A stretch of 64,000 nucleotides of DNA from Ramazzottius varieornatus (GCA_001949185.1 BDGG01000001.1:8031067-8095066), one strand, 5' to 3'. Positions 29,950 to 52,020 are shown, counted from the stretch's first letter. The notes: generated by a model not told the origin, from the sequence alone. A program made the numbers and translations.

Positions 29950-30790
29950 AACTAGCCTTGACCGGCAAAGAGATCCGTGTCGTCCCTATCGTCAAACTCC
30001 TCGCTTGTGTCACTTTCTTCGGTTTCATTCTCACTTTCGTCAATCACCATATCCGCCGGGTTAACGACCACACTTGGCGGGAGCGGTGGAGCTGCGGCAC
30101 CGAGATCCGTATTGGAAAAGTACTTTTCCGCTACTTCACTGTGTGGAATAACAATGTCTTCGTGAACATTAATGACTATCAAGTCAGACAGTCGTTCGTT
30201 TTTCACGAACGTTCTGAGCCAGGTCTTTCCCGCTTAAGCACAGAAAAGCATCTCTCATCACTAGCGGATGTTATGGGAGCAACTGCGTAAATCTGGGATT
30301 AAACTAGGGAAGTGTAGTACAGTGGCAACAACGCATCCCAATAATCAAATCAAAATAATGATGTTGTTGTGTACCATGGCCCGCCCCGCAAGTTTGATAC
30401 ATTAGATTAAGGCCGCGCCGGCCCTGTACTCTAGCTCTTGTACAACTATCGTATATGTTGGGTGTGGAAGCTGAACGTAGCTCACGTCGTGTACCGCGTA
30501 CGCGACGTAAGCGCCACCTGGCATGTTGTGGACTGATGTCTCTCCAGTCGTCGTTGATGAGCAAATTCCATTTATGCGAACGTTTCTGGATACTTGCTCT
30601 GCTTTCTTGCCAGTGACAACTTCCAAGTCAATGGATGCAGCGGAGGTCTTATCTGTCCTCAGTACGCTACTAAGGTTCTGCCAAGCGGATCTTAATCTAA
30701 GATGCTCACTGAGATCTACGTTCTCTCCCTTAACTAAGCTCTGTTTCATTTGCTGACGGGTAGCATTTTTGGCTTTCTGATCAGTTCTAC
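29950..30790 (-). pseudogene. hAT transposase relic (C-terminal dimerisation region)
   Basis: The reverse strand reads IYAVAPITSASDERCFSVLKR-(frameshift)-KTWLRTFVKNERLSDLIVINVHED, the hAT P.TS.S.ER.FS.L.R.K..LR...ERL motif. Upstream is PTYTIVVQELEYR. Confidence 0.8.
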
Positions 30791-30794
30791 AACG

Positions 30795-31185
30795 GATTCT
30801 ATAACGATCATGTGCGTCAACTTGGCCATTCCAGAAATCTGAGATCAGCTCTTGATCATCTCGCTGCCGGGGAAGATCAACTGATAAAATCTGTGGTCGT
30901 CACTATGTATGACCCTACATGCAGTCGCACGCTGGTCAAGTAATCAACGGTAATGACATTGCCTTGTGCGGTGTACCAGGTAATGTTCGATTGACCGACA
31001 GCTGATCATTGATTAACCATTCTGCCTCGTTACGACTACCCAAGGCTTGCTTTACGCGTGCGGCTGCGTATACATAGTGAAGACCAAATATTTATCAGTT
31101 GATCTTCCCCGGCAGCGAGATGATCAAGAGCTGATCTCAACTCTCTGGAATGGCCAAGTTGACGCACAAACCGATCTAAGAACTT
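30795..31185. mobile_element. Foldback element with ~100-bp arms, interrupting or abutting the hAT relic
   Basis: TGTGCGTCAACTTGGCCATTCCAGA..GAGATCAGCTCTTGATCATCTCGCTGCCGGGGAAGATCAACTGATAAA is inverted at ~31091-31168. Confidence 0.85.
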
Positions 31186-33589
31186 TGACTGTTACAGAAT
31201 CCACCAAAAACGTACGAGGAAGCCAAAAATACCACCCATCAGCGAATGAAAAAGAGCATAGTGTGTTTCCTTTTCTGATACCGCGTTCTTGAACGGGGCA
31301 CGATCAGTCGCAGAAGCTCGTCCGCTATTGCATTTATTTAATTTATCCGTTAAGCAGCTTAAGACGACGTTGCGCACATTGAAACTCAAAATTAGAATAG
31401 ACAAAAGTCCTGTCTATCAAACCGAATCTGTCAGGGATAAAGCTTAGCATTCTGCAAAGAAGAACCCGACCCGTTCGGAACGAAGTATCCCAAGAGCATG
31501 CAAAATGGAAAATTTTTACCACACGAAAACTGGCATAAAGTTTCCATTTTGGTTTGCAATTTGTTGAGAAGGTTTGGTTCCACCAAAATGTCTCAACAGA
31601 GCGCAAACCTGTAGTTATAGCTGCAATCTTCGATATGTAACGTCGATTTTGAATAATGTTTCTAACTGCGGTCATAAATGTGGCTTTCGCAACCTAACCT
31701 TTCCGGCACAACTTGGGTACAGCTTTTCTTTCAGAGTTCGAATGAGACCCCAGTTTCGCCTGATTTTGGCGGAATAAGCACTGCATGTCTAACTGTAGCT
31801 TAAAGCATCTATGTTAATTCATTGAATTTAACTGCGACTATTCTGACCGAATCAGTTTCTGAACCGGTTCAACTTTAACCAGTCGGAACTGAAAACCTCT
31901 TCTTTCTGTGGTTTGATCAAGCTTTACTTCGCATAATGCGATATTTCTTCCTCAGCTACTGTGAGAGAAATATTGGAAATTTTACAAGATGCTACCGGAA
32001 AAGCTGCACGAATCGCTTGTCTTGCGTAACAAGCGTCAGCCTCATACGATCAGGTCAAGGAGCGAGTGGATCTAAGCATCTACGCTATTCGGTTCCTAAC
32101 GCGGCATAAATCCGATTGCAACCTCTGTAATGTGTCATAGCGACCACACATGGTAAAACGAAAATTTGCTTCCATGGGCGACCCACTGTAAAAAATTTTA
32201 ACCAACGGACAAAGTTAGAACCAACTCTTTGTACTAGAAGTAATATTTCTCCATTTCAGCGTAAAACTAGCACGTGCTACTGTTCGAATAACTCTCTCAA
32301 GTAGAAGCTTTCACCTGTAGAAACCCGTGTTGGTAAATTCACTGTATGCTGTAGTCGTGCGGTTACTGCGAGGAAAGAAAAAGTTTGCGTTTGCCGGATC
32401 CGGTCCAAGTCCATACTAGCAAGGTACTTCAGCCTTTTTTTCGGCATCGAGTTCATGCCTTTACTGTAGGAGCATGAGGGAAGAGAAACGATAGATTCTC
32501 GGTAGACATTTGTGGTAGCCTCTGCGGAAGAAATGGTTCTTTTTCGCTAGAGGTGCTGTAATTTTTTGACATAGTGATAATCCTTTGCTACGAGCTTTTC
32601 GCTTCGCGTTCGGTTCGCTCGCAGCTTGCACAAGAGAATCAAGAAAAACACGAGAAATATTTTGTTGAGCACGGGAATGGTGTCGGATCTGAGAGAACTA
32701 TTAATATAACGTACCTAAGTTTCCTTGAAAATTCTGACGGTCTTTAGAGACAAATTCTGGACTGGTTACCTTCGCGAAGACAGCAAACTAGAAAAAAATT
32801 GCCACATTTTCAAATACCCGAAATGGCCAATCATAATTTTTGAAATGTGTACACGCAAGACGATAAATTATGGGACAGGCGGAAAGGACGGCGAAATGGA
32901 AATTGGACCGTAGAAAAGTGTCCAAAAATGTATTACTATGAATCAGTCGCGTACGTACGAGCTCCCGTACCGCCATAGCGAGCCCGGCGACATGAGCTTA
33001 TAGGAAAAAAACAATGTGTATGCGAATTGTCTGGAATGAACCGAGTATCAATATTTCGATTAGGAAGTGGCTATAGGCACTCATATCGAACCCTGTTTTA
33101 TTGCTGATTTACTACAGACACACCTATTTAATTCAGTAATTAGGAAACCTTTGATTCGGCGGATTAGCTATCGGCACCCCGACATCTTCGATAGGAGAAC
33201 TTATGCCAGGAATTAGGCAATAAACCGGGTGGCCTATAGTCGAACAGGGTTCCAAAGGGTGCCCATGGCCAAGCGAAGTTTCAAGGGTTGCCTACAGCAT
33301 CACTTTATTCATGATGGAGATGGAATGGCGATGAAGTGACACATGCGTCGGGTTTCGTGCACCCAACTTAAAATACAGTAATGTTTACAGCGAAATTATC
33401 CAAGTAGAGCTCGGTGGAGACCGGTGGAGGATTGTGGAGTGCGTGGGGAGGATGGAGGGAATTCATGATTTACAAATTTTTGGAAATGTATGGTCAGGTT
33501 TGAAGAGCAAACGTTTAATATACGGGTACGTCCGAAACCAGAGGGTGGTTTAGAGAACCGAGGATCGAAGACGTTGCGAGGAATGGTTA

Positions 33590-35613
33590 TTTGCCGTTGT
33601 ACGAACTGTGCCGGATTGTAAAGGGTTTTGCATTCTTCGCGCAGATGGAGGCCGTCGATGGCGATGGATGTCTCCTGAAACATGTTCTCGTTTTCAGGTC
33701 CAAAAGCTTCGGGAGGCAGTTCCTTCAGAGCCGATAGACCGGCAAGATTGCACCTAGAACATTCAGGCGGAAACTGAGTAAAACGGTCAGTGGCTAGTTG
33801 ATTATTTTACCACGCACATGTTGTCGTATATAAGAAAAAATTCTTTTCGATCGTCGAATTGCACTCCTTGGAGGCGTCGGTGCAGTCACTCTAGAATCAA
33901 CAGTAGGACCTGCGACAAGCTTTCTGATCTGTAAAGGAATAGATCCGTTGTGCTAACGCCGTAGCCTGGAGATGTAGGTTTTACCGGTACAATGGCGCAA
34001 AGAGTTGAAATGTGCCCGCACCCGTGGACAAACACAAGCAATCCGCCACTACAGCACCCTCTCTTCTTCTCGCCATGGTTTTTTTAGCAGAGAAGCTGGC
34101 CGAAACCTGTAATAACAGGTCCAATCTCACAGATAACTCTCATTTCAATCTTATTTCATCAAGGTGAGAATTACCTGTTACTCAATCTGTTTTCACTTCC
34201 ACGGGACTAGAAATCGGAAGTCGTGCTGGACCGGTCACCTGGTTTCCGTCCTTAGTTTTCGCTGCGGCTTTCTGCTTTAAGGTGACTGGGAGGCCATGCT
34301 CCTCCGCAAGTCCCCAGTGTTCCCCGCAAAACAGGTAGCCGTGCTTCGGTTCATTGGTGCAGACAGGTGGCAATTTGATACTTCTCATAGCCACGTTCTT
34401 CTGTAGAGTTGATTACTTGGAAATGAACAAAGTACTTTTTGTGACTATCCTCATCATGAAGTAGATGTGGCTTCTGACCCGCATGGGCATCTCGCAATGG
34501 CGATGACAGATCTTCCATACTCCATCGACTACATGCAAAAATGGACACCCCTACTGCTTGCCGTACTCACCGCAGTCGTGAGGGTACAACTCTTCCAATC
34601 GCAGGTTCTCTATAAAGTCTTTCAAGTTGTCGCAGTTGAATCTATGTGAACTGAAACCGTAGTTTAGTTGCCGCGACCAAAGTTCGTTCTCGATCTCATT
34701 GACGTAGAATATTTCGGACAAATGTCGCCGACTGAAATCTGGAGGACCCATTTTTTGTGTTACGAACGGACAGTGTGGATCATGCGAGGCCGCCGTTCAA
34801 TCCAGTGCTCAATTCAAGAACCCCACCAGTTAGATTGTAGATTTCGACTTCCGGACTACTTACTTTTCGGCCAGTCCAATCTCAGACGTTTTGATTTAGC
34901 AAACCTTTCGAATGTAGAGTGCGAGTGCAGACTATACCGGACATAAAGCGAACGTATATTGTGATTAGATTCAGGACGGTAGTTTGAACTGTTGACTTAC
35001 ATGTCGTTGACGAGAAGTTCGGAAAGAGTTCGGGTTACGTAGACGTATTTGGATACGTATTTGGAAAGATCTCGTTACTCCTCGTACAGGAAATGCATTT
35101 TCTTGCTGCTGTCATAGTAGGTGAAATAAGAGTAACGGGATTCGCAGACTAAGCATGGAAGGGTGTAGTCGAATCCCTGCTTGACTACCCGGTCAAGCTC
35201 GAACACCTCCACCTGTAATTTATTAGCGTATTTAAAGGAAAACATATTTCTGGTGATCGACGAACTAAATTTACCTCAACCGCACTCTTGTGTCCCACCA
35301 GCTGGCACGGGTCTCCCTTGTTTTTGCCGCGCTTGTACCGGCATCCGAGCAAGCAGACTTGTGTCGGTGGACAAAGAAAATAAACTCGATTATGTGGCGT
35401 TCTTCTCTGCACTAGCTCAGGAACAGTGCGCCAGAGTTCCTCGATGAGACAAGTGATGTCAGCTTTTTGGAGACCTAGTGACGACTCGAGAGCTTGGTAG
35501 GCGGCTTCTTCCGGAGGATTTTCAGGCAGAGTCCAGAAAACTTCTTGAACACGGATCAAGACATCCCAGCCGTACCTCTGGCATAATCCACCGATTAATC
35601 TCGCATTTGCCAT
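33590..35613 (-). pseudogene. Intron-rich KDZ-type (Kyakuja/Dileera/Zisupton) transposase with CxC5 and CxC6 domains, disabled by stops
   Basis: Phase-compatible exons 35613-35275, 35212-35001, 34931-34864, 34738-~34478, then exons to ~33590. They give LCPPTQVC..C, GFDYTLPCLVCESRY, HSHSTFERFA, SRRHLSEIFY, VVDGVWKICHRHC, CTNEPKHGYLFCGEH, GGLLVFVHGCGHI..FAPLYR|SESLSQV, YDNM|CNL and IDGLH...C..LYNP. Confidence 0.75.
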
Positions 35614-36159
35614 AACCCGAGACCGTACGAAAAGTTGTCGGAAGACCTGGATTATGAGGGAAATAAACGACAAACGGATCGACAATAGACATACGGTGGA
35701 AGAACTACTTTACGATCTAGCTCCTGTTGTTGTTTTTCTGTTTGTAGGCATTTTTCTCTAATCTCGAAGTGGCGTTTTGTTTTGGTGAAGCGTGACTGTG
35801 CTGGCGAAATACTTGCTGCTGCCACCGGCAGTGGTTTCGCTCAGTAAAAAATCACTGCGGCACTTAGATGTAATGCCACATAGTGTGCACCATAGAATTC
35901 ACCGTACAGCGACGCACTGCAACTGTCTAAACCATCTCGGATTTTCGAACCAATTACAGCGGTACGGGCGTGTACCAGTAGGCAGATTCTGAATACTTTC
36001 ATCTTTGCTTTATTTATTCACAGCGAACACATTTTGAACTGTTTATCTGACCAATTTTCTGACGTCGGTCTTGTCAATTTCGAGGCTTCTAACGGGATAC
36101 GGTGACAACAACAAGCGAGGTTAAATTGCCGAGCGTTGCCGGAGACAACATGAGTTTAC

Positions 36160-37488
36160 TCGTACCGAAAAAGGAGATTGCTTCTCAGAAGGTGAGTTGA
36201 GTGACACACCGAGAGGATAACAATGCTGATTTTTCATTCACAGGAATGGTGCAGAACCGGTGTTTGTTTTTCGGGATTAAAAACAAATACCCGGCAAAAG
36301 ATGCTAACAACTATTTGCTTAACTTCGACCATAACATCGTCCAAGAAGTGCGATCCGGTCAGAAAATAAAGGGAGGGTGGGTGTTTAAGATGAAACATCT
36401 GAACGACCAACGAACGAACGTAGTAAGTTTGCTAACCTCTAAGCCTAATTTAAGAGCCTTTCAATTTCGAGCACCAACACCCCAATTTTTCTGATTGCAG
36501 TATCGATTACTCGACCAGTGCGGCGTTTCAGAGCAAAGAGAATTTTCACTCTGAGGTTCAAAGCACACCCGACTTGCCAGCAATTATCGCAAAACGATTG
36601 ACTACGGACATGCTCGGATCGCTGATATCCTGGAAGTCCCAGTTTTACAACGAGTAACAAAGATTTACCTTCCACCAAAAACTGTAATACAGTATCCAGC
36701 TTGAATTTTAGATACTGCACAAAGAACAATAAACTGGTGGACGAGAAGCCAGTCGAGCACCGTAACTTGATGGACGACAACAAAACGTTTTGCTTCGCAC
36801 CGTCGCTGTTCTTTGAGATAATTGATGGAAAGATCGTCAAGATTGATCGCAGATCCTCGGAGTATGTGTGGGTGAAGTCATTAACGGTCCTTGTTCCCCT
36901 AGAAGCGCACACTGAACCGGAAGAAGGAAGCGTGCTGGAAATTATCCGACGAAAGCTAGAAGCAGATGGCATGGACGATCTGTTCATATGCTACTTACTG
37001 ACCTGCGGTAAGCAACACTATTGCCTATATCTTTAACAATATGTCTGAATTATTAAGTGGTTATCTTCCGCAAAACAGCCATGTTCTCTTCCTTTCTCAG
37101 GTCATACAGCAGTTCTTAGTCTTCACTACAGTGCCATCTTGGAGAAGTTCAAGCACGTGCCTGCTTTAATCGTGACGGGGAATAGGAACACCGGGAAAAC
37201 TCAGTCGACTGAGCTCTCGCTGTCCTTTCTTGGAACGAACGCGGACAGCCTTTGTGTCGCGAAAGAATTCTCGCTGCCCGCCCTCTGACAGCAATGTGCT
37301 GAGGAGCCCTTTCCGTTGGTTGTGCATGACTGCAGCGACAGCAATACGGTGGCCACAGCCATACACGAAAGTTACGAGGGGAAGCCTACCATGAAGTTCA
37401 GCGAAGATGTGAAAAAGAAGAGCCAGTCATCAAAGACCAGCATAGCCTTCACGTGGAACGAAAAACAAATGGAGTACTTGCGCACAAG
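36160..37488 (+). pseudogene. Spliced P-loop NTPase gene, SF3-helicase-like; one in-frame stop at 37286-37288
   Basis: Exons ~36244-36422, 36501-36653, 36712-37007 and 37101-37488; the last three are phase-compatible. The last exon has LHY...VPALIVTGNRNTGKT (Walker A, 37178-37201), PLVVHD (Walker B) and SIAFTWN (motif C/sensor-like), about 40 aa apart. Confidence 0.7.
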
Positions 37489-39159
37489 GTAGGTTGGAAT
37501 CCGTTAAATTGCTATATGTGGCGACTAGATACCCCGAAAGGCCTAAAGCAGAGAACCGAAGATGCGACGAATGCCGTGCAGCCCTTTAGACCGCGCCGGT
37601 GAACCGATATCATCTGATGCCTTCTTCGCAGGTCTTTATCGCGTTATATTCAACCAAACGAAGCTGTCCTAATACTCTAGTTTATCCGCCTCAAACTTAG
37701 TTGACAGGTGATTTAAGCCATCTAATGTCTTAGATTGACTGTTTATGATTATTTTGCCTGAAAAGCTCACTGGAACATTTTTTCGCTCCCAAAACAGTCA
37801 ATATCTGTCCAGTTTTCCGAGTTTGCAGTCTTTCCACTAGTTGAAATATTTGATCGTATTCTTTCCTGTGAACGTGTTTACATATGATCGTGCTGGCTCG
37901 AATGTGGAGCAACATATTGGTCAGAATATACCTGCGACAGACGGGTGGTAGGCACGACACAAAACAGCAAACAGTTAACAAAGATCGGTATGAATCTTTG
38001 ACATGTTGGGCGGGACTTAGAGCTGCTCAAGTCAGCTCGCGCCCGGGCGACATGAAAACCCACTTGAGCCAAGTTCGCTGTCGGGAACTTACTATGTAAG
38101 TTTCACGATTCGGTGCACAGTTTTGCGCGTTACAGTGCCATACTTCATCGCACTTCTCTCTGAAGAAAACCCCGGGAACAAAAACACGGAAACAAAAACA
38201 ATAGGTGATTTCAAACTGTAGCGGGAAAACACCAGCGAACTGTTACCGGCCTGAAGAACTATGCTATTGTATTTCCCCTATGATATCGTGGCAGGAAACA
38301 TGAGGGCTTAATCTTTCTAATGTAGATGGCTCGATTATCAATGGCGTCGACACAATCAGGATTTGTACCTGATAATAAAACAAAACCACCACCAGCCACG
38401 TTACAGTTTTGTAACGTACATGTAGACAACCAGCAGACGGATCAATGAATGCTTGACATCTAAACGCCGCTTCTGTTCGGTAAGCCTTAATGGTTAGCGG
38501 GAAATCTACAAGGCTCGATTAATTCGCTTCGGTTTTCAAGGTGAATTATCTGCTTATCCTTGCAACAATGACGGTTTCTATCATCGTCGTCAACGGGTTT
38601 TTTAGAAAATGTGCTGTCCGCGCCATTGGGAATCTATTCAAACCGCCAAAACGTGAGACAACTCATTCCTCACAAAGTTTTGCTTTGGGGTAGAAACCTC
38701 CCGCTGCCGTCATTTCACATTACCATATTGTGTATTTCTGCAGCACGTCCGAACAACCTCGGAAGAATCATCTCTCGTCCAAGACCACGTCCAGAGAAGA
38801 CGCTGCTCCTTATATCTCCTGCCAGCTCTGTCAACAGTATCTCGGACGAAGCCAAGACTGCCAAACCATCGGGTGTTGTTAAAGCCGCAACATGGGTGGC
38901 AAAGGCTGCGGGTACTGGTGCAGCGACCGGAATGGTAGAATGGTGGAAAGGTTGCGGTGCATGCGGGAGTGGAAGCAATCCAGAGAGCCAGAGCAGCCAA
39001 GCTTGACCTAGAGGCGACAACTGCTATTGCATTTCCCCTGAAGGAGGCTGGTCGTATTTCCTCCAATACAACCGACAAAGAGGTGAATTCTCAGAGCATA
39101 AGCCTGTAGTAGTACGTAGCGTTTTTGTCAATCGTCGATTAAGCGTTGCTCTTCATCAG

Positions 39160-39679
39160 GTTGACGATGCAGGTAGACTGTACCAAGAAGAATGGAAAGA
39201 AGATGACCCAGAAGAGGAAGACGAGGAAGAGGATGACGATGAGCAAGAGGACGAAGGGGAGGTTGACGAAGAAGGGATGGGGAAGAAGACAACTTGCGAG
39301 AAAGTCGTGAAGACAGCGCGGAAGCACCTATGGCGGAATGGCACCAGGAAAATTACGAGAATACTGTCCAAAACGAGCCCTTCTACGGACAGATCTACAA
39401 TCAGCTCTTCCACCACAACTCATTAGTCTGAACGATCGTTCAACCACGTCAATTGTCACGTCGACTGCGGCTCCGGAATGCAGTTCGAAGTCACTAGCAT
39501 TGAGTCTTATTGTGGGTCTGTGTGTGGTGGCGTTCCTCGTTCTCGTGGCTATGGCCGCTTTAATTGGCGCGTTCATCTATAAGTGGAAAATCCAAAATGC
39601 TGATTGCAAAATGCAGAAGGACGTAGAGAAGCAGAAAAAAGAACCTGACAACATCTCCCTTTATACTCTTAAGCACTAA
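39160..39679 (+). pseudogene. Frameshifted exon of a single-pass membrane protein (acidic tract, Ser/Thr stalk, TM helix, basic tail)
   Basis: TTCATCAG acceptor; EEWKEDDPEEEDEEEDDDEQEDEGE; then, in a shifted frame, STTSIVTST...LALSLIVGLCVVAFLVLVAMAALIGAFIY-KWK. Confidence 0.5.
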
Positions 39680-40148
39680 ACATACTGCGCAACGCATTCC
39701 AGCCGAAAATGCGATGCTAATAAGATGCTTCTTTACTTCGATTTCCAAGATTATCCTTTGTAATGAAACTGTCTTAACTGTTGCTTAACCAGGCGAAACT
39801 TTTTTTCTCGAAAATACATGGCTGGTCACAGCAAAGAGACTGACAGTAGACAAAGAAAAAATGCATAACCGATATGGTCAACCTTTAGAGGGAATCGGCG
39901 TGTGGTTTACGCGGTCGTGACAGCTGGGCGCGTCTTCGTGAGAACTCATGTGTAATGCACCTGTTAAATGGAAGGTGGGCATATCTTCTTGGGTGATGCA
40001 ATTCCGTACGCTTATTCCGGTCACTAGGTAAGAATGAAGGCTAGATAAATTACATCGACGTTATTTTCCCCCATCCTGTTTCTATGACCAGCTAACGCTG
40101 TCAGCTTGGCTCAGAGGTGGTGTTGGTCACAAGACCTACCCCAAGAGC

Positions 40149-40601
40149 TTGAAGAAGCGATACACGGGATGCGTACTGGTTGTCGACGAATGGTACCAGT
40201 CAGTCGAGAAGAAAGGTGTTCCGGATCGATTCGAAGGACAAAAACTGAGGGACATCTTCCCTGTGACAGATTCAGAAGTCCTGCAAGTCATCGCTAAGAT
40301 GGGTTTAATCGATCTACGGATCAGCGAAGCCCAGTGTTACGACGGACAAGATAGGAAGTACTATGAAAGGATGAAGACGAAGAGGCCGTTCTTCGACAGT
40401 CCTGTTCGGATCGTGGCCCAAGGTGACAATGGAAAGAAGGCACAAAAAAACAGCAAAATCAACTCCCCCCTAGTGTCCAACTCCATCGCCGTCAACATGA
40501 ACTTCGTCTATCCAAGACACAAGTTGGCCATGCAAACCTATGGACGAGGCTACGGAATCACCCAGATGTGGTGCTATGGGAAGGTGTCAATTGAACACTA
40601 A
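40149..40601 (+). CDS. Unknown protein-coding block (150 aa open frame), probably a terminal exon
   Basis: Open frame with globular-protein-like composition followed by an AT-rich 3' region; no motif recognised. Confidence 0.35.
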   Translation: MKKRYTGCVLVVDEWYQSVEKKGVPDRFEGQKLRDIFPVTDSEVLQVIAKMGLIDLRISEAQCYDGQDRKYYERMKTKRPFFDSPVRIVAQGDNGKKAQKNSKINSPLVSNSIAVNMNFVYPRHKLAMQTYGRGYGITQMWCYGKVSIEH

Positions 40602-41129
40602 TTATTTTTTATACTTTAATTTACACATCTGTGATCCTAATTTATATATATTCCTATCCGTCTGCTTTTTGTACGGTCTTATGCTCGATGGTCTGTGGTT
40701 CGAATCGTCTGAAATTGTTTTGCGGATTTCGGAACACTCCAGCTGGGTGACACGTGCGGTTTTCATTGTTTTTTATTTTGGATCAAATTTATGAAAAATT
40801 TTTCGGTTTCGAGAACCATTTTGCATGCACTGCACAATACGCTTTGCCTATCTATGTAAGGTTTTCTAAGCTTAACCAACCAGGAAGTAAAGACGTATAT
40901 TACTCCAGTCTGCGTGTGCCTAACCTTGAAATCTAGTCTCACAGCAGCCCGGGTCAAATCTTACATACCTGCAACCTGGGCTGAGAAGCGCAAACGCAAA
41001 TCTATTAGCGTGAGAACGGGGATGATGAAACGAAAAACTGAAGCCGATCTTGTAGCGTCCTATCTTCCCGTGTGAAGCGTGAGCGCGAAGCAGATGTATC
41101 TTCAGATAAAACTAGCAAGCAGATAAGCT

Positions 41130-44100
41130 GAAGTGGGCTCTACCGCTTGAAACAAAACAGTGCCCTCGGTGTGACGTTACTCTGTTTTGTTCTGATGCGG
41201 ATTCTTTGTGCGGCGGCCCAACCTTAAGGAGAAAGGAAACGTTGATCGAGCCACCTGACGTACCGCCTGCGTGGATCGCGCTGTGCATGATCACTGCTTT
41301 TGCAACACATTGTCGTCAATACAATAATCATTTTGCGCTCAGTGCGATTGCGTCAACGCACGGTATAGATCGGGTTCTTGGCGGTCCGTCGAACTTAATC
41401 CTGCACGACAAAACATACCATCGTATTTCACCCGGGCAGTACGAAACAGGACCTTTGCGGATTTTTTATGTGCGACGGGCTGAACGGAAACAACGACGAA
41501 CTGGAATTAGATGACAGCTGGGTAACAACCTACGCGAGGAACTCTCACATATCAGTCCATTCTGGAATAATTTGAAGTCCCTATCGAAAGAAACTGCAAA
41601 ATTTGCCAGATTAGAACTTACAGTTACTGGTGCTCGTGAGATTGCTGCTCTGATTGTTGTTGATCCGGTGAAACCCATCAGTGCAAACACTATTGTTTAC
41701 TGGCTTCAAACGAAGAGTGCACCTGTTTTCATCAACTCTAAGTCAGGACTCCATTTTCCACTACAGTACGTACTTTTTGCGCCACACGGAGAACCCGGAT
41801 GGAATGAGGACGTCAAGCACAACTTAGTCAGTTGGCGTATTACAGACAGCTTTTAATGCGACACAAACCAATGCATATGCTCGGTCCTCTGCTAAACGAA
41901 TTTCTGGTCGATATCTTCAGTGCAGTTGAAACCAACCGTTTAGACTTTCAGCGCAAACAGCAAAAGCGAGTTGTCCGAAAAGGTGACCTGTCGAAATTGA
42001 GGAGCGATGAGACTATCAGTGGGGTGTTCAACGGGATGTTCAAATTGGAAGAGTGTACCTCTCGTCTAGTTTCCTTGGGTCGCCGCGTCATCAGCAAAAG
42101 TTAGTGGTCGATGCTTTAGCTATCGTCAAGCGATTCGGCAATCCGACGTTCTTTATTACAATGTCTTGCAACCCTAAATGGCCAGAGATCATGGACCAAC
42201 TTCTACCTGGACAGACAGCAGCCGATAGACCTGATATAACGGTTCGGATGTTCCATGGAAAACTTTCACAGTTGTTCGAGCTCATTCCGAAAGCAGTAAA
42301 GTGTGGCAAAATAATATATCGAATACATGTGATTGAGTTCCAGAAACGAGGCTTGCCGCATGCTCACATTGCTATCAAAACACAGAAAGAACCCGTTACC
42401 GTCGACGAGATTGATCAAGTGATTAGCGGATGTGTACCGCATGATAATGCGCAGTTGAAAGGAATAATTGAATCCTTATATAAACATTCGTGCCGACCGG
42501 AACGATGTCATAAGAAGCAGAAGAATGCGGACCGGTACAAACAACCTCGCAGACCTCTCACGAACAACAGTTACATTGACGATGCTGGATATGTACCGTA
42601 TAAGCGTCTGACAGAACAAGACCGGTTAGTTGTAACGTACGACCCGGAACTGACCTATGCACAGACTGACACATAAACGTCGACATCTCCCACACCGTTC
42701 TGCTCATTGTGTACTTATATAAGTACTTTTACAAAGGAATGGATCGTGCAAAGTTGAAGCTTACGTTGTTGATGAGATCGCCGAATACCAAGATTCTCGC
42801 TACCTTTCAGCATCCGAAGCTGCTTGGAGATTCTTTGGTTTTGAAACCACCAGGAGGATACCATCGGTGGATAATTATGTCGTGCATATGGAAAAAGGGA
42901 ACTATGTAGTATACAACAAAGGAAACGAAGACTCCGCTTTGGAATGTATCTCATAGTTAGAACGATACTTCCTACGTCCTGAGGATCCCATTTTTGACAG
43001 CATAACTTATCTGCAGTATTATGAACAACACATCGTCGGTAACGTTATGCCTAGCAAAAAAATTCAGGGCTGTCTAACAGTTTTCAAGAATGATGCAAAA
43101 GACGGAAAGAAGTGCTAAGTGTACGCGCGTCAGTCTATACACGTCGCCAGAATGGACATCAAGCGACTTAGTGCTGGTGAAGTATATTTCCTTCGGATGT
43201 CATTGGACCGGCGACCAGCACGTTCCTATGATGATCTGCGCACTGTTGACGGTATCTACTACAGTACCTTTTCCGAGGCTGCCGTTTCAATGGGCCTGGT
43301 TGCTAAAAATGGTGAGGCTGACCTTCGTATGCAGGAAGCAATCGAATGTCTTCGATCGCCCGCTCAACTTCGTAGTTTGTTTGTATTACTTATAAACGAA
43401 GGAGCTCCTGCCGCTGACCTATACTGCAGATTTCTGACGCAACTCGCAAAAGATTTTACCGCTAACCATAGCCTGCCGGAGCAAGAAGCAGAAAACAATG
43501 TTCTCACAGATATCTCAATGTAATTAGAGTGTCTTGGAAAGTCAAACACAGATTTCGGACTAGCTGAGCCATTAAACCGAAGTACCGAGTTAAATCGAAT
43601 AAAGCTTCAGTTCAACAGAGACCACTGCATGCAGCAGTTCAATGAAAAGGTTTCTTTCCTCAATAACAAGCAGGTGAAATTTTTGACTACAGTGTGTCGA
43701 AAACTGGATAACTCAGAAGCCGGCCTCATATTTCTGAATGAACTAGCTGGACGCGGAAAAACATACGTTTGCAACCTCTTACTAAACTACGTCAGAGGGC
43801 AAGGGCAAGTGGCATTAGCTTGCGCCAGTTCCGCAATTGCAGCTATGAATTACCCCGGCGGTCGAACAGCCTATAATATTTTCAAGATTCCAGTTAAAGA
43901 AGACTACCTGGACCTGACAGAAATACAGTGTGACGTATTACCGACTGGAGAACGTGCAGAACTGTTGCGTGAATGTCGACTGGTGATATGGGATGAATTT
44001 TCCATGATGCATCGCACAAACTTCAAACCAGTACTGAAAATGCTTCGGAACATCAGACGCGACCGAATCCAGCAGCGTGATGTTTAGGAGACTTCAGACA

Positions 44101-45020
44101 AATACCACCAGTCATAAAATTTGGGACGATAAAATCTGAGACTGTATGAGATACGATAATGTTAAGCTCTAGCACTTCACCTCACTTCCACAGGTTCGAC
44201 CTTACTATACCTGTGCGACAATCTCAAGACTTGCCATACGCCGAAATGTTGGACATGATAGGAGATGGAACGATCGCCGAAAACGAAGAAGTAATACTGG
44301 AACTGATCAACACAACAACAGAATTAAATACCCTAATTGATTTTATCTACCCCGACCTACGTACCAAAGGTCACGCGGATACAATTTCTACCGCCATTCT
44401 CAGTTTACGCAACGCCGTCGTCGATTATATCAACTCAGTCATCTGTTCGTATTTGCCATCGAACTACATCGATCTGTTTAGTCATAATTCACTGATTGAT
44501 GACAGCGACACCGACCTACAAAACCTGGGTATCAGTGAAGAATTCCTGAACACCATATCCAAGCCCAACACGCCACCGCATACATTGCGACTCAAAGAAG
44601 GGATGCATTGTTATCTCCTTAGAAACCTTTCACCGGACGATGGATTGCTCAGCGATACCAAGATCAAAATTCAAAAGATAACGCGACAACTGATAACAGC
44701 TGAACTAATCAGTACAAAAGATGTGATACTTATCCCACGAATTACGTTTGAACTAGATTTTCCCGGAAACAAATTGAAAATCAACCGTAAGCAATTTCCA
44801 ATCAGGTGTGGCTACTGCAAAACCTACAACAGGTCTCAAGGAGACACTCTTTAAAAACGCGAACTCGATCTCCGGGAACCGCCATTCAAAAATGGTCAGT
44901 TATATTTTGGAGCTAGCAGAACTCAGACTCGCCACACCCGTATGGCTTTATGTTTACCGGGAAATATCACAGACAATGGTCATCCACGAACAGTAAACAC
45001 TGTGTATCCAGAACTGTTAC
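41130..45020 (+). pseudogene. Helitron RepHel: N-terminal Cys motif, HUH Rep endonuclease, Pif1-family helicase; multiple frameshifts and stops
   Basis: CPRC..., RQYNNHFAL, SSFLGSPR, FITMSCNPKWPEI, DRPD, VIEFQKRGLPHAHI, YLYKYFYKG, AGRGKT, IWDEFSM, GDFRQIPPV, IPRI, FPIRCGYCKTYNRSQG, GQLYFGASR. Confidence 0.95.
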
Positions 45021-45059
45021 TCGAATACTTCGAAACCTAAGAAACACAAAGTACGGCAG

Positions 45060-45557
45060 AACAAAAAAACTTGACACACCTTCTCACAACCACAACGACA
45101 GAACACCCGCACGCAAGCCACCTCTGCCAAACCTTGCGCGTGAACAAGCGCTTACTAGAAAAATTCCTCGAAGATCACGACCTTCGCATCGTTCCTGTCA
45201 TAGGAGACAGGGAGTGTCTGTATCGTACAATATCATACTTTTTGTTTGACCAGAACCAGTCCCATAGTAGAAGAATTTCAAGAGCATGCAGAAAGATACC
45301 AAGATTTCTTGGCAGCCAACCACGATAACGAAGAACCCAATATGGACGAACTCATCGAAGCATTTTCCACACCGGGCACGTGGGGATCTCAAATCTTCCT
45401 AACAGCAGCGGCCAACATATATTTGTTTGATCACACTATATTTTTTTCTGGTCACAAACTGGAATCTGATAAACATCCAAATTACAATTATGATACTCTC
45501 TTCAATGATAATCTCATGTCTAACTGCGGTCATTACAGTGCCACCCACGATCGATAA
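45060..45557 (+). pseudogene. OTU-like cysteine protease domain following the helicase
   Basis: VIGDRECLYRTISYFLF (D..C-L-Y-R), GTWGSQIFLTAAAN and GHY; split by a frameshift. Confidence 0.75.
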
Positions 45558-46080
45558 CATTAGTGATGCCATCTTCAGTACAGATACTACAGTATTCACT
45601 ATGGTTACACTGACAACACATACTATATTCTCTCCGGAAATGGATGTAAGTCACTCAATCCAAAATGTGAAACTGCAGATATGGTCGGTAGGCGGTAGCT
45701 CAAGCGATTGAAACAGCTGTGACGCCACAGGATTCAATCAATCCAATCAATCCGGAGAGTTCACATTTTGCTTGGTTCAGTTATGAAATCAGCTGTTCAG
45801 TGAATGACTCGCACAGACAGTGAAAGCTGTCCGTAAATACGTCAAGATCTGACGCCATGCTGGATTTGTATAACAGCTACGCTAATACTCTAGTGAACCA
45901 GATATCAGTGACGTACATCCATTTCCGCAGAGAATACAGTAAACATCGAACCCGCCATATCGTGTTCGAAAGATTTCCACTGGCATGACCTTCTGGGCTG
46001 TTTCGAATAATCCGCTTCCGGAACTTTAATCTTCAATCTTCCATTCAACCATTATTCACGTTAACACCTGATGTCTTACC

Positions 46081-47290
46081 ATGGGTTCTAAGACCAAACC
46101 AGCTGTTTCTGCTGAAGCCAGTGCAAATAAAAAGACGAAACCAAATGATCCCACATATAATGACCACCACATTGTTCCACCGCCACTACCGCAACCACCA
46201 GCTTCCGGATCTAAAACCACTCCGGAACATGGTATCAACCTGCACGGAATACAGCCATTCTGCTTTGGTGGCGACGGCAAGCAACAGCCGAAAATTAATG
46301 CTACATGTCAGATCGTGGGCACTGCCGATGGTCCCAACGGATCTCTACATTTGGTCGGCTGGGACACTGAGCATGAATACTCCAGTTTGAAGTTCGCCAA
46401 CCAACCGCCTAAGCCAAGTACCGAATTGTTATGGTCCGTTGTCAGACTGAACAAGAAGAAGGGCCTTAGGTAAAACTTATCGCAACATAGTATACACAAA
46501 CTTGCCGCAATACGCAAGCCCAACGTTTCATCTTTAGAGTCCTAACATGATCCTAACCGATATCACCATTCTAAAAACCCCGCAAGATATGGCATTCAAG
46601 AAATTCAAGCCCAATCAGCATAAACTACCAGAAGCTGTCTGCCCAACCCTCAGTTCCATCAACGTAATGAAAAATAATCAGCTAGTGTAAGATCCGTACT
46701 CTCATATCGAACACCGACCATCTTCTCACGCAACTCTCTATCACAGTGACATCCAGCTACAGGTACAGAACGCATCAAACCTACAGGAACTAGGGGGAAG
46801 AACGCTTATCGTTACATGCTCACCGACAGAACTGACTCCATCAACCTCGTCGTTTGGGATAACCAATTCGATGGCTGGCCACTCCAAGCATTCGAAATGG
46901 GCAAGGTAGACTTCAACAACAGCAACAAATGCCTCTCAGAACGACTTGTGCGGTTTCACATGACTTTTACAGATACTTGACTTCAAACAAGTAAAGGTGA
47001 TCAATCGCCCCCAGTTACTCTATACTGCGACGAACCCACTGCAAATCCTCCGTATCAAGGACAGCACCGAAATCGTGATCGAAATGATGATCTCCCACCA
47101 GCCTTACCTCACTGAAAAGGAAGAAACCTACACGAAACTAGTACAAGTCACCCATGCCAACATAGCCCTAGACACCCGTAAGCAATCAACAAACTTCTGC
47201 CTAACTCTATCTGCATATGAGTATCGGCGGCCCAGTTTGCATCCCAACGTTTTTGGCTCCGAACTACCCTTTTTTGCCATGAAGTTGTGA
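46081..47290 (+). pseudogene. Spliced RPA70/SSB-like OB-fold gene carried by the Helitron
   Basis: Removing introns 46687-46746 and 46906-46972 and allowing one frameshift in a G run (~46793) gives SINVMKNNQLV|DIQLQVQNASNLQELG-KNAYRYMLTDRTDSINLVVWDNQ...FEMGK|ILDFKQVKV...ILRIKDSTEI. Confidence 0.6.
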
Positions 47291-47310
47291 GCAATATCCA
47301 GGGATATCGT

Positions 47311-47336
47311 GTGGCGAAGCCACCACGCTTCGCCAC
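47311..47336. repeat. Perfect 10-bp-stem hairpin GTGGCGAAGC-CACCAC-GCTTCGCCAC
   Basis: Directly visible, 21 bp after the last Helitron ORF; not followed by a canonical CTRR. Confidence 0.8.
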
Positions 47337-48069
47337 CGAAAAAAGTTTTAAAGAACTGGTCGCCCGTTTGGGAAGATTTCTTTGGAAATTCCAGGGGTGA
47401 CTAACAGCTATAAAATCCCAGTCTGGGGGTTTGGTGTCAGAACGATTGTGCGCGCATTTTTATGCTGTGCGACGTCATCGTGACGCCAAAAATTTTTCGG
47501 TCAAGAACTCGAACCCCATTTCCCTACAGAGCGTTGGGCTGCAAATTGGGCCGCCGACACCCATATATTTCTCAAATATTTCAAACCTTATCATTTGAAA
47601 TTGTTCAGGATCATTTGAACAGCTTGTATAAAGGTCGATGATGTTTCGGTTTATAGGTCCATCTTTACACCCGCAATAGATGCATGTATCTAAGTCTAAA
47701 GATTGCTTGGTGATAACCATGACCCGCTCATTACCCCCCACAAAACTAGAAAACCAGGGAAAAATATGTGAAAAATTAACGGTGGGTAATCTCAAAAATT
47801 CGGCTGCATCACCAACTCCGCCGTATTCCGTACGAGTTATGGTCGATTTTGGCGTATGATTGATATTATCGTTATTTAGACTCCTTTTCGCTTCTGCTCA
47901 AAGTTTTTCCCTGTGCTTCGTTCTCTGTTGTGCTACCTCGTCGAATACTGTTAGGAAGTGGTCGAACATCGAGTCAGGCACTGTTACTCGACAGTAAGGA
48001 AGGAATCTCAATCAGTGGGAGGTGGTGTTGTTTCCCGTCTAGCCTGGCTCAGTCAATCAATCAAACGGG

Positions 48070-49147: not shown

Positions 49148-52020
49148 TTGAGTCAGCGAGCGCCCAATTTCCCCAATGTAAAATCAAACGTCAAGTTACA
49201 TACCCTGTTGTTTCGCCACTGCAATGTCAGAAGTTTGAAGTCCAAGAGTGCGCAGGTTAAGTCGTGGTGCACCGCTGCCGATATCTGTATTATTGATATA
49301 ACTGAAACGTGGGATGACGGCTGCATAGCCGACAACGTCTTTGCTGATTTACGGTGTTTTAATGTTTTCAGAAAACCACTTTTAGATGGGTATGGAGGTG
49401 TGGCGATGGTTGTCAGGAAGATGGGGTTGTGTACTTGAGACAGAGCTGATCTTGAGTGCAGTGAGATAGAATTATTAGTTATTGAGCTTCCCACAGCAAA
49501 GGTGATTGAAGGTGCATTCTGTGCGCCACCAAATAAGGTAGTGGAAGATGTGTCACGATTGAGCGACCACGTCCGAAAATTTCCACAAGAAATAATTGAT
49601 AAGCTGATACTCATCGGCGACTTCAACACTCCGAATGTCGATTGGGGTAAATGTCTGGCAGATACACAGAATGGGCGGGTCTTGTTAGAACTTTGCAGAG
49701 AAATGTCGTTTAGGCAACTGATAGATTTTCCGACTCGAAACAATAATGTTCTTGATCTGATTTTCACCCCTAGAACTTCTCTAGTTACAGATGTAACCTC
49801 AGTATGTCCGCCTTCCGCCAAGTGTGATCATGATGCTCAACAGTTCAAACTTCATCTTCGCAAACAGAGAGTGCAACCAGTCATGAAGTGACGATGGAAG
49901 TTCGTCAATGGATCTCAAGCAGCCTTCGTCGAGGCAGTACGAGTCGCCCACCTACAAGACCAGTTCGATATCATGACGTTACGCTGTGCAGCTGAAGTCC
50001 TGGATGACGCTCTGGTAGAGATAGCTTCTTCTTATCACCGGTACATCACGCGCGAAGAAAAACGCAACCACCAGACATGTCGAAAAGAAATTGTGAAGTT
50101 AAAACAAGTGAGAGACGCCGCGTTTAAAAGATTCAATCGCTGCAAGGTTCAGCCGCTGCAAGATGCATTACGGTGAGCGCGGGGAGATCACTCGAAGAAA
50201 CTCGAAGCAGCTATTGAGAAGGTCGAAACAAGGAACTTGCTCGACATCGCAACTGCCTCCCGTCGGGACAGTAAGAAGTTCTGGAACTACGTCCGCACAA
50301 GCGTCGACAAGAAGCCACTGCAACCCATCAGCGATCCCAACGGTATACTTCACTACGACGACACCAAGCGAGCGGAACTTCTAAACTCCGCTTTCGTGTG
50401 CGGCATGCTGCCTTGCACTGAACACTGTATCCATCAGCTGGCGACCCTCTTACTGGAAGAGCCAGATCCGCAGTGGAAACTGATTAGTGAAGATGAGGTG
50501 CGAGAAGCGCTTAACTGTATGGACTCAAAGAAGGACTCAAAGAAGTGTTGCAGCGCTGGGTATTTCCCTGATCTCTGGAAAACCCAATATGTCACTGCTG
50601 TTCCGAAAAGCTCGAAGGACCCAACCTCGGTTTCTTCGTGGAGACCCATCTCCATCTTACACCCAATATCCAAGTGTTTTGAAAAGGTAATCGGTAAACG
50701 ACTCCGTAATTTCCTGGAAGGCAGGAATGCATTTGGGAGTAATCAGTTCGGTTTTCGTGAGGGTCACTCAACGGAGCTCGCTAGTCTACTGATAACCCAG
50801 TTCTGGGCAGACGTAAATCACAGCAAGGTTGAGATCGATGCAGTGTTTTTGGACTGCACGAAAGCGTTTGATCGGGTCGATCCTAAAGTGATGTTACAGA
50901 AGTTAGAGATGTTTGGAGTCCCAACTCAGTGCAGAAGATTGGTAGAGAGCTATCTGTCGAACCGACGACAGGTGGTTACTGTGAACGGTAAGTCATCGGA
51001 CGTCTTGCCCGTAACAAGTGGAGTCCCTCAGGGATCTGTTCTTGGTCCGATCTTATTTATTGCTCTGATGTCTGATACAAATACTGCTGTATCGCCTGGT
51101 ACTTGTCTCAGTCTTTTCGCAGATGATATTTTAGTTTCCCGTCCACAAGAGACCGCCAGTGATCATTCCATTTTCCAACCGGATCTAGACAATATCGCCG
51201 CCTAGACAATACCAGGCGATAAAGAAGTATTTATATCAGACATCAGAGCAATAAATAAGATCAGACCAAGAACAGATCCTTGAGGGACTCCAACTTGGAA
51301 GGAACTGTCATACCTAGTGCGCTCACCGCCAAGTACCTGGGTATCCACATCGACAGCAGACTAACCTGGACGGCTCACTGGTCTGCCAAATGCGCGTCAG
51401 TCCGTAACCGAATCCGAAATCTAAATTCCTTGCTCAAGTACAGGAACTCGGCAGCACGCATCAGGCTGTTTGATGCACAAGTGCAATCTTTACTTGACTA
51501 TTGTCCATCGGTTGTGTGGTCGTCGCTGGTAGGTACCCTCAGAGAAACTGAAAAGTGCGCTGGTAAGTTTCTCCGCACAGCTCGGCTTGGTGATAGCCCT
51601 AGCTGGTCTGATCACGAACGGTATCACTTTAATGCCTTGGAAGTTGGACGGAATAGCCGATTGATTCGGCGGATAAAACTGTCACTATCTCTTGCTTACA
51701 AGCTTATTGTTGGTACGGTGCCGTTGGGTTCTTGTGTTTTCCAGCCCTTAGAAATTCCAGAGGGTTTTTGTCCCTCGTACTCAACACGAAGTCTGAACAG
51801 AATACGCACGCATCTCTGTCCCGTTCAGCCCACTGGCTCCTTCCTGAATCGTCGAAAGTTACTCACCAGTCCTGACTTCTTCGTCGGGATAATGTGTAGC
51901 TTGTGAAACTCGCTGGACTTTCCAGCTGCTGCCTATGAAACTAAGTGGAAATTTGAACTAGCTCTCGTGTCTGTTGACTGGAAGTCTTTTCCTTTGCTAA
52001 ACCGACTTTTTCCTTGTGAC
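49148..52020 (+). pseudogene. LINE ORF2 (APE endonuclease + reverse transcriptase), broken by stops, frameshifts and deletions
   Basis: NVRSL, ITETW, GGVAM, GDFN, PTRNNNVLDLIFT, DH; WRPISIL, QFGFREGHST, DCTKAFD, GVPQGSVLGPILF, FADD, KYLGI. Confidence 0.95.

What the first reader, a model, noticed from the sequence alone, without database searches (positions are those of the whole stretch)
32184..40700. Candidate giant KDZ transposon with a head-to-head SF3-helicase-like gene and extra cargo
Seen in sequence: a spliced CxC5-CxC6-transposase gene (minus, ATG at 35613) and a spliced P-loop NTPase gene (plus, from ~36.2 kb) diverge from a ~500-bp spacer. Both have short introns and similar light decay (isolated stops, frameshifts), as expected if they were inactivated together. 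They are followed by more unexplained coding blocks (~37880-38095, 39160-39679, 40149-40601). Established knowledge: KDZ transposases carry CxC cysteine clusters and are known to travel with accessory genes. Inference: one large element couples an RNase H-fold transposase with a replicative-type helicase. I do not recall this pairing being described, and it would suggest a replicating or virus-like DNA transposon.
Basis: partly seen in the sequence, partly recalled or inferred. Interest (0 to 1): 0.88.

Follow-up and report, generated by a model that had tools for sequence, protein, structure and literature searches.

The report
Dead transposase-like and helicase-like gene pair
In what is probably a tardigrade genome, two broken genes sit head to head: a cysteine-rich, weakly transposase-like gene and a relic of a tardigrade-only ATPase resembling viral replicative helicases. 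Whether they once formed one mobile element could not be tested.

Summary
The divergent gene pair is real. The minus-strand gene starts at ATG 35613 and the plus-strand gene at ATG 36150, 536 bp apart.

The plus-strand gene is a pseudogene of an unannotated P-loop ATPase family with a PHD-like finger. The named relatives are all tardigrade proteins (Paramacrobiotus, Hypsibius). The window copy has two canonical short introns, two clear frameshifts plus a probable third, one nonsense codon, and has lost about 400 residues.

The ATPase core resembles SF3 helicases. Four motifs line up with the phage P4 alpha helicase core, and the best phage matches are primase-helicases. Four other ATPases scored below 1%. 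No Pfam SF3 model matched, and both structure predictions failed.

The KDZ label for the minus-strand gene rests on one sub-threshold CxC5 hit (E 0.019) and motif resemblance. No KDZ transposase domain was detected.

I found no TIRs, TSDs, second copy, or cargo domains such as primase, polymerase or capsid.

Verdict: gene identities partly supported; the single giant element is unproven.

The parts
33399..35613 (-). Cysteine-cluster, transposase-like pseudogene (KDZ-like candidate), with ATG at 35613
   Evidence: Stop-free pieces in order: 35188-35613, 35078-35275, 34185-34796, 33802-34106 and 33399-33806. The only family hit is CxC5, E 0.019. Piece 33399-33806 found no homologue. The 66-aa ORF at 34554-34751 is an annotated public protein.
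35078..35275 (-). Piece with the weak CxC5 cysteine-cluster match
   Evidence: Pfam PF18718 CxC5, E 0.019, 15.6 bits (cut-off 26.9), profile positions 24-72 of 117. It overlaps piece 35188-35709 in another frame, so a frameshift lies within 35188-35275.
34185..34796 (-). One reading frame of 204 codons with two in-frame stops (34551-34553, 34413-34415). It carries Cys/His clusters and a VVDGxWK motif.
   Evidence: All three pieces share one frame. The resemblance of the motifs to KDZ or CACTA-type transposases is my recollection, not a test.
33802..34106 (-). Exon-like pieces joined in frame by a candidate GT..AG intron at 33929-33984. A further candidate intron at 34107-34196 links them to the upstream frame. 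There is a TGA at 33886-33888. Motifs include ...YRSESLSQV... and ...LIYDNMC.
   Evidence: Sequence and translations. The splice model is inferred from the sequence alone.
35614..36149 (.). 536-bp spacer between the two divergent start codons (possible shared promoter region)
   Evidence: No function was tested.
36150..37589 (+). Pseudogene of a tardigrade P-loop (SF3-like) ATPase family with a PHD-like finger, internally deleted
   Evidence: Homology. The N-terminus MSLLVPKKEIASQK resembles the N-termini of P0009 and P0005. Frameshifts lie at 36491-36508 and 36630-36654, with a probable third near 36250. A TAG lies at 37286-37288.
36192..36243 (+). Intron 1 (52 nt, GTGAGT..CAG)
37009..37100 (+). 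Intron 2 (92 nt, GTAAGC..CAG, phase 1), at a position conserved in the family
   Evidence: The ORFs P0001 and P0002 read into the same intron and stop there.
37178..37201 (+). Walker A (GNRNTGKT; family consensus GPRNTGKT)
37316..37333 (+). Walker B (LVVHDC; family consensus PLIIHDC)
37442..37462 (+). Motif C / sensor-1 (IAFTWNE; family consensus TCNE), followed by a conserved donor AAG|GTAGGT at 37488/37489
   Evidence: It aligns to the motif C asparagine of P4 alpha.
37515..37589 (+). Remnant of the last ~19-24 codons of the family's C-terminal PHD-like finger, plus the stop. The ~400 residues between motif C and this point are missing.
   Evidence: tblastn of P0008 residues 627-645 against 37530-37586 gives 47% identity, E 0.036 in 4.2 kb. 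The Cys pair and the stop sit at the same positions. The rest of the C-terminal halves of P0008 and P0009 has no match in 37.3-41.5 kb.
37590..41100 (.). It is unassigned and not shown to belong to the pair.
   Evidence: 58 stop-free pieces on both strands gave no Pfam hit better than E 0.005 (Cadherin_C_2, on a transmembrane-like segment). Piece 40038-40598 has no PDB match. Several frames are open at once at 38.6-39.1 kb.

Best explanation
The locus is a dead, internally deleted relic of a mobile-element-type gene pair in what is probably a tardigrade genome.

One gene is a cysteine-cluster, KDZ-like DDE transposase gene on the minus strand. The other is an SF3-like P-loop ATPase with a C-terminal PHD-like finger on the plus strand. 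They were transcribed divergently from a 536-bp spacer.

When intact (inferred):
- The transposase would have excised and inserted the element.
- The ATPase-PHD protein would have served as an accessory, as a ring ATPase acting on DNA during or after transposition.
- The PHD-like finger would have tethered it to chromatin.

Nothing works now. Both genes carry frameshifts and stop codons, and the ATPase gene has lost about 400 residues, including its arginine finger.

Shown: the gene pair, the homology, the intron structure, the decay and the SF3-like motif set.
Inferred: the transposase identity, the linkage of the two genes in one element, and any role in replication.
For: - Both genes keep their 5' ends and face each other across only 536 bp. 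Random truncation of two unrelated relics would rarely produce that.
- Both show a similar density of disruptions, about 3 per kb.
- The ATPase copy has a large internal deletion. From general knowledge, this is common in dead DNA-transposon copies.
- The ATPase family occurs as further copies at 76-87% identity, some carrying different upstream sequence (P0001-P0003).
- Motif order and spacing fit SF3 helicases.
- hhalign of the family profile against P4 alpha covers residues 497-618: Walker A, Walker B, motif C and the arginine finger, inside Pfam DUF5906 at 500-608. Probability is 62%.
- hhalign against the Bdellovibrio phage phi1422 primase gp23 gives 80-86% probability.
- One family member (P0012) hits phrog_35358 'DNA primase' at E 5e-6.
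- The best tblastn match in 50,697 phage records is the same primase gp23.
- Controls scored far lower: PIF1 0.9%, T7 gp4 0.15%, T7 terminase 0.27%, T7 kinase 0.3%.
- Large KDZ elements with extra ORFs of unknown function are documented in fungi (PMC11343200).
Against: - No KDZ_trans (PF18758) or CxC6 hit appeared in any of 50 pieces, even at E up to 10 for the ten main pieces.
- A CxC5 hit at E 0.019 is what about one in 50 piece searches would give by chance. Several unrelated families scored alike.
- No TIR or TSD pair exceeds chance.
- There is no second copy in the window.
- The next 3.5 kb has no domain.
- Intact family members in Paramacrobiotus are annotated as ordinary standalone genes. 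Their neighbours could not be inspected.
- The family is small: about 8 real clusters among 1.84 billion representatives. That is few for a successful transposon.
- No Pfam SF3 model matches the family.
- Both AlphaFold models were of low confidence.
- A bacterial AAA-type ATPase, picked for its P-loop, scored 93% in hhalign over 29 columns. Short hhalign matches here are therefore P-loop-driven.
Confidence: 0.4

Rival explanations
1. The two pseudogenes are unrelated relics that ended up side by side in a repeat-rich stretch. One is a transposase-like relic. The other comes from a separate ATPase-bearing element or endogenous virus-like sequence.
For: - The neighbourhood is a mosaic of repeats. 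A Helitron relic lies at 41.1-44.9 kb. A foldback repeat lies at 30.7-31.3 kb, with fragments elsewhere in the window. LINE-like ORFs at 49-52 kb were read by eye.
- No shared boundaries, TIRs or TSDs were found.
- No literature record of a KDZ plus SF3 pairing turned up.
Against: - Both genes keep complete 5' ends only 536 bp apart. That leaves little room for two sets of element termini and 5' UTRs.
- The decay is similar on both sides.
Confidence: 0.3
2. The ATPase-PHD gene belongs to a fast-evolving tardigrade host gene family, such as a chromatin-associated ATPase. The window holds a decayed duplicate of it, next to an unrelated transposon or cysteine-rich gene relic.
For: - Named homologues are full-length, intron-bearing models annotated as ordinary genes in Paramacrobiotus (two paralogues) and Hypsibius.
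- Intron positions are conserved across members at 40-60% identity.
- A PHD-like finger points to a chromatin role.
- The family is small and found only in tardigrades or unnamed environmental contigs.
Against: - Several decayed or divergent copies exist (P0001-P0003).
- SF3-type ATPases are, from general knowledge, typical of viruses, plasmids and mobile elements rather than cellular genes.
- The window copy has an internal deletion.
Confidence: 0.2
3. The minus-strand gene is not a transposase at all. It is a decayed cysteine-rich gene of some other kind, and the CxC5 hit is chance.
For: - The CxC5 hit is below Pfam's cut-off and at the level expected once in 50 searches.
- No KDZ_trans hit was found.
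- Piece 33399-33806 has no homologues.
- The only 'Zisupton' entry in the published tardigrade repeat library is a raw automatic label on a low-complexity consensus.
Against: - Only about nine of 24,736 Pfam families are KDZ-linked. One of them fell on the piece named beforehand, for a targeted p of roughly 3e-4.
- The order of Cys/His clusters and of the DG..K..SES..QV and ..YD..C motifs fits my recollection of KDZ or CACTA-type transposases.
Confidence: 0.1

Closest known systems
Large KDZ (Kyakuja-Dileera-Zisupton) DNA transposons of fungi, e.g. Cryptococcus KDZ1-3 and KDZx1 (PMC11343200)
   Same: - An N-terminal cysteine cluster lies ahead of a transposase-like body.
- The fungal elements are 6-11 kb and carry extra ORFs without known domains.
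   Different: - No PF18758 domain was detected here.
- No TIRs or 8-bp TSDs were found.
- The host is an animal (tardigrade).
- The partner gene is an SF3-like ATPase with a PHD-like finger. The papers read here do not report that for KDZ elements.
- The copy here is dead.
SF3 (D5 / phage P4 alpha type) primase-helicases
   Same: Walker A, Walker B, motif C (Asn) and an arginine finger fall within about 120 residues. They align colinearly with P4 alpha 497-618, which is Pfam DUF5906. The best phage matches are Toprim primase-helicases.
   Different: - No Toprim, D5_N or Pox_D5 domain is present.
- The N-terminal ~200 residues and the helical C-terminal region match nothing.
- A C-terminal PHD-like finger is present.
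- No Pfam SF3 model reaches even E 10.
- Helicase activity is untested.
Helitron (the neighbour at 41.1-44.9 kb)
   Same: It is another helicase-bearing eukaryotic DNA transposon in the same window.
   Different: It has a HUH Rep plus an SF1 PIF1 helicase, and is a separate element. hhalign of the ATPase profile against its PIF1 piece gives 0.9%.

Membership tests
KDZ transposon (Kyakuja-Dileera-Zisupton) | KDZ transposase domain (Pfam PF18758) | tested here: not met
   All 50 stop-free minus-strand pieces of at least 28 aa were scanned at E up to 0.5. The ten main pieces were scanned at E up to 10. Neither gave a hit. Fragmentation lowers sensitivity, and the joined model was not searched.
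KDZ transposon (Kyakuja-Dileera-Zisupton) | N-terminal CxCn zinc-chelating cysteine cluster | tested here: inconclusive
   CxC5 at E 0.019, 15.6 bits against a cut-off of 26.9, on 35078-35275(-). CxC6 was not found.
KDZ transposon (Kyakuja-Dileera-Zisupton) | Terminal inverted repeats with target-site duplications (8 bp in Zisupton; PMC12730594) | tested here: not met
   Only chance-level inverted repeats were found. No TIR plus TSD combination appeared for TSDs of 6-10 bp.
KDZ transposon (Kyakuja-Dileera-Zisupton) | Several copies with shared boundaries | not testable with these tools
No eukaryotic genome collection was available.
SF3 helicase | Walker A, Walker B and motif C (Asn) within about 100 residues | tested here: met
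   The motifs are GPRNTGKT, PLIIHDC and TCNE in the family, and GNRNTGKT, LVVHDC and TWNE in the window.
SF3 helicase | Arginine finger shortly after motif C | tested here: inconclusive
   In full-length members, an LSR segment aligns with the P4 alpha arginine-rich segment. The window copy has lost this part.
SF3 helicase | Significant profile similarity to a recognised SF3 family | tested here: inconclusive
   - For: phrog_35358 at E 5e-6 for one member; hhalign 60-86% against two primase-helicases; four controls below 1%.
- Against: no Pfam SF3 family at E up to 10; no PDB sequence match.
SF3 helicase | AAA+-like SF3 fold | tested here: inconclusive
   The two AlphaFold2 runs gave mean pLDDT 48 and 46. 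A fold search was not run on such models.
SF3 helicase | ATP-dependent DNA unwinding | not testable with these tools
   This needs biochemistry on an intact member such as XP_055330522.
PHD finger | Cys4-His-Cys3 zinc finger matching the Pfam PHD model | tested here: inconclusive
   P0009 scores E 0.0033, 17.8 bits against a cut-off of 24. The family profile gives weak matches to UHRF1 and DPF PHD fingers, E 0.06-1.

The most novel reading that the evidence does not exclude
Tardigrades carry a family of DNA transposons in which a KDZ-like DDE transposase is paired, head to head, with an SF3-like ring ATPase bearing a PHD-like finger. That would be a cut-and-paste element with a replicative-type helicase module borrowed from viruses or plasmids.
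Probability: 0.3. Interest if true: 0.75.

Novelty: new variant of a known kind. Interest (0 to 1): 0.45.

Why it matters
If the pairing recurs, it would be, as far as I know, the first DDE-transposase element with an SF3-type helicase partner. It would also be a KDZ-like element in an animal phylum whose repeats are barely curated. That would bear on how cut-and-paste transposons acquire replication-type modules.

Apart from the pairing, the ATPase with a PHD-like finger belongs to an unannotated family found only in tardigrades or unnamed environmental contigs. It has no Pfam model. Intact copies in Paramacrobiotus could be studied directly.

As it stands, the window copy is a dead relic, and the key claim is untested.

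Tried and rejected
- Pfam, PHROGs and PDB sequence searches of the window pieces gave nothing beyond the weak CxC5 hit.
- The search for homologous proteins with full-length P0009 returned only P0009 itself, because the candidate cap was filled.
- The search for homologous proteins with the 136-aa minus-strand piece found nothing. Its length limits exclude full-length transposases.
- The metagenome scan returned only two bacterial AAA-type ATPases next to gatB, similar in the P-loop alone. The viral-contig scan found nothing.
- Two hits from the representative search were spurious: P0006, a tandem-repeat protein, and P0013, a bacterial Ig protein.
- Both AlphaFold2 runs (full-length P0009, and core-only P0012) had low confidence. 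No fold search was run on them.
- TIR and TSD searches gave only chance-level pairs.
- I considered a HUH or AEP primase reading of the family's N-terminal domain by eye. The motifs are not conserved, so I dropped it.
- 'Zisupton' in the tardigrade repeat library is an automatic label on a low-complexity consensus.
- The spliced or joined models of either gene were not searched. Only exon-wise, stop-free pieces given by reference were used.


Full report
SOURCE AND SETTING

The window is eukaryotic and not human. The named relatives of the plus-strand gene are tardigrade proteins:
- XP_055330522 and XP_055327386 from Paramacrobiotus metropolitanus
- OWA55001 from Hypsibius exemplaris

A 66-aa ORF of the window (34554-34751, minus strand) is itself a public NCBI/UniRef protein on a 9.33-Mb contig. 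The neighbourhood is rich in repeats. A Helitron relic lies at 41.1-44.9 kb, with Helitron_like_N at E 3e-36 and PIF1 at E 5e-28. A foldback repeat lies at 30.7-31.3 kb. Rfam found nothing in the window.

THE PLUS-STRAND GENE (36150-37589)

Homology. Stop-free pieces of the gene find clear relatives.
- Piece 36626-37033 hits P0001 (E 3e-47, 76% identity) and P0002 (E 4e-42, 87%).
- The Walker A piece 37049-37285 hits ten proteins among 1.84 billion representatives. Two of them are spurious.
- Mapping the homologues back by tblastn covers P0009 residues 19-342 and P0005 residues 17-346 over 36255-37501.

Gene model, read from the sequence and the homologues:

| Feature | Coordinates | Notes |
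|---|---|---|
| Start codon | 36150 | |
| Exon 1 | 36150-36191 | MSLLVPKKEIASQK, like the N-termini of P0009 and P0005 |
| Intron 1 | 36192-36243 | |
| Exon 2 | 36244-37008 | |
| Intron 2 | 37009-37100 | |
| Exon 3 | 37101-37488 | ends at a consensus donor |

Uncurated ORFs from other assemblies end inside the same two introns. These intron positions are therefore conserved in the family.

Damage.
- Frameshifts lie at 36491-36508 and 36630-36654, with a probable third near 36250.
- A TAG lies at 37286-37288, between Walker A and Walker B.
- There is a large internal deletion. Nothing in 37.3-41.5 kb matches the C-terminal halves of P0009 or P0008, except the last ~19 residues of their zinc finger at 37530-37586. 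That match ends at a stop in the same place as in both homologues.

The gene therefore ends at 37589, and about 400 residues are missing.

WHAT KIND OF ATPase

Full-length members (645-774 aa) match no Pfam family except a sub-threshold PHD finger at the C-terminus. The family profile finds only PHD fingers weakly in the PDB.

The core carries GPRNTGKT, then PLIIHDC about 45 residues later, then TCNE about 40 residues later, then an LSR segment. That is the SF3 pattern.

Unbiased searches point the same way.
- Among 38,880 PHROG families, the only significant hit is phrog_35358 'DNA primase', E 5e-6 for P0012.
- Among 50,697 phage records, the best tblastn match is the primase gp23 of Bdellovibrio phage phi1422.

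Profile comparisons against single sequences (hhalign):

| Target | Probability |
|---|---|
| phi1422 gp23 primase | 80-86% |
| Phage P4 alpha | 60-62% |
| Window's PIF1 piece | 0.9% |
| T7 gp4 | 0.15% |
| T7 terminase | 0.27% |
| T7 nucleotide kinase | 0.3% |

With the longer family profile, the P4 alpha alignment runs over residues 497-618. It covers Walker A, Walker B, motif C and the arginine finger. This region lies inside the Pfam DUF5906 SF3 core at 500-608.

Caveats.
- A bacterial AAA-type ATPase, fetched through its P-loop pattern, scored 93% over 29 columns.
- Both AlphaFold2 runs failed, with mean pLDDT 48 and 46. I ran no fold search on them.

I rate 'SF3-like' at about 0.65.

THE MINUS-STRAND GENE (about 33399-35613)

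The ATG at 35613 is there.

Decay and candidate introns.
- The frame 34185-34796 is open except for two stops.
- A further TGA lies at 33886-33888.
- Candidate GT..AG introns at 34107-34196 and 33929-33984 join pieces in frame.

Its family is not established.
- Scanning all 50 stop-free pieces gave only CxC5 at E 0.019, below Pfam's cut-off. That is the level expected by chance about once in 50 searches, and unrelated families scored alike.
- Taken as a targeted test of about nine KDZ-linked families, the hit is better than chance, at roughly p 3e-4.
- No KDZ_trans or CxC6 hit appeared.
- The 136-aa piece found no homologues.
- Motif resemblances (VVDGxWK, YRSESLSQV, LIYDNMC) rest on my recollection of KDZ and CACTA-type transposases.

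I therefore do not file it as a KDZ member. I call it a KDZ-like candidate, at about 0.5.

ONE ELEMENT OR NOT

For a single element:
- Both 5' ends are intact and only 536 bp apart.
- The decay is similar on both sides.
- The ATPase gene has an internal deletion.
- Further diverged copies of the ATPase gene exist.
- Fungal KDZ elements of 6-11 kb carry extra ORFs (PMC11343200).

Against a single element:
- No TIRs or TSDs were found.
- There is no second copy in the window.
- No domain was found in 37.6-41.1 kb.
- No primase, polymerase or capsid gene was found.
- The ATPase family is small.
- Intact members are annotated as ordinary genes.

The decisive test is whether the pair recurs with shared ends. 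It could not be run, for these reasons:
- The metagenome scan returned only bacterial P-loop look-alikes.
- The viral scan returned nothing.
- No eukaryotic genome collection was available.

LIMITS OF METHOD

Every search used stop-free pieces given by reference, which costs sensitivity, above all for the transposase domain.

VERDICT

The SF3-like reading is moderately supported and the KDZ reading weakly supported. The 'giant composite transposon with cargo' remains an open hypothesis, at about 0.3-0.4.

The solid new item is an unannotated family of SF3-like ATPases with a PHD-like finger, found only in tardigrades or unnamed environmental contigs. The window holds a dead, internally deleted copy of it.

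Noticed in passing
window 41116-44851 (+): Helitron relic just downstream. It has Helitron_like_N (42011-42673, E 3e-36), PIF1 (43524-44084, E 5e-28) and the Pif1 2B domain (44150-44851), split over several frames. It sets an outer limit of about 41.1 kb for any element holding the gene pair.
   Followed up: partly
window 30733-31262; also 20056-20127 and 2891-2954: A ~530-bp foldback (palindromic) repeat. Its inner arms, 30811-30888 and 31091-31168, are 96% complementary. Related fragments lie elsewhere in the window at 78-90% identity. It looks MITE-like.
   Followed up: partly
window 34554-34751 (-): This 66-aa ORF is one fragment of the decayed minus-strand gene. It is present as a protein in NCBI, UniRef and nr (P0014), on a 9.33-Mb contig. 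The public annotation therefore carries a pseudogene fragment as a protein.
   Followed up: partly
window 49439-51903 (+): Long ORFs that look by eye like a LINE endonuclease and reverse transcriptase. They were not tested against any family library.
   Followed up: no
window 18001-20000 and 44001-48000: Strong negative GC skew (-0.20, and -0.15 to -0.16). The first stretch holds a 257-aa Ser/Pro/Thr/Leu-rich open frame at 18858-19628.
   Followed up: no
window 38570-39680: Several frames on both strands are open at once at 38.6-39.1 kb, which suggests stop-poor composition rather than coding. An acidic low-complexity run follows at about 39.15-39.3 kb. A transmembrane-like segment at 39311-39676 has a weak Cadherin_C_2 match, E 0.005.
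   Followed up: partly
window 40038-40598 (+): A 187-codon stop-free frame with no match in Pfam, PHROGs or the PDB. One frame of that length is expected by chance in 64 kb, so coding is unproven.
   Followed up: partly
L001 1985-3181, L002 546-1742: Bacterial ATPases of about 398 aa next to gatB share the P-loop string VTGPRATGKT with the tardigrade family. hhalign scores them 93% over 29 columns only. This warns that short P-loop matches inflate profile scores.
   Followed up: yes
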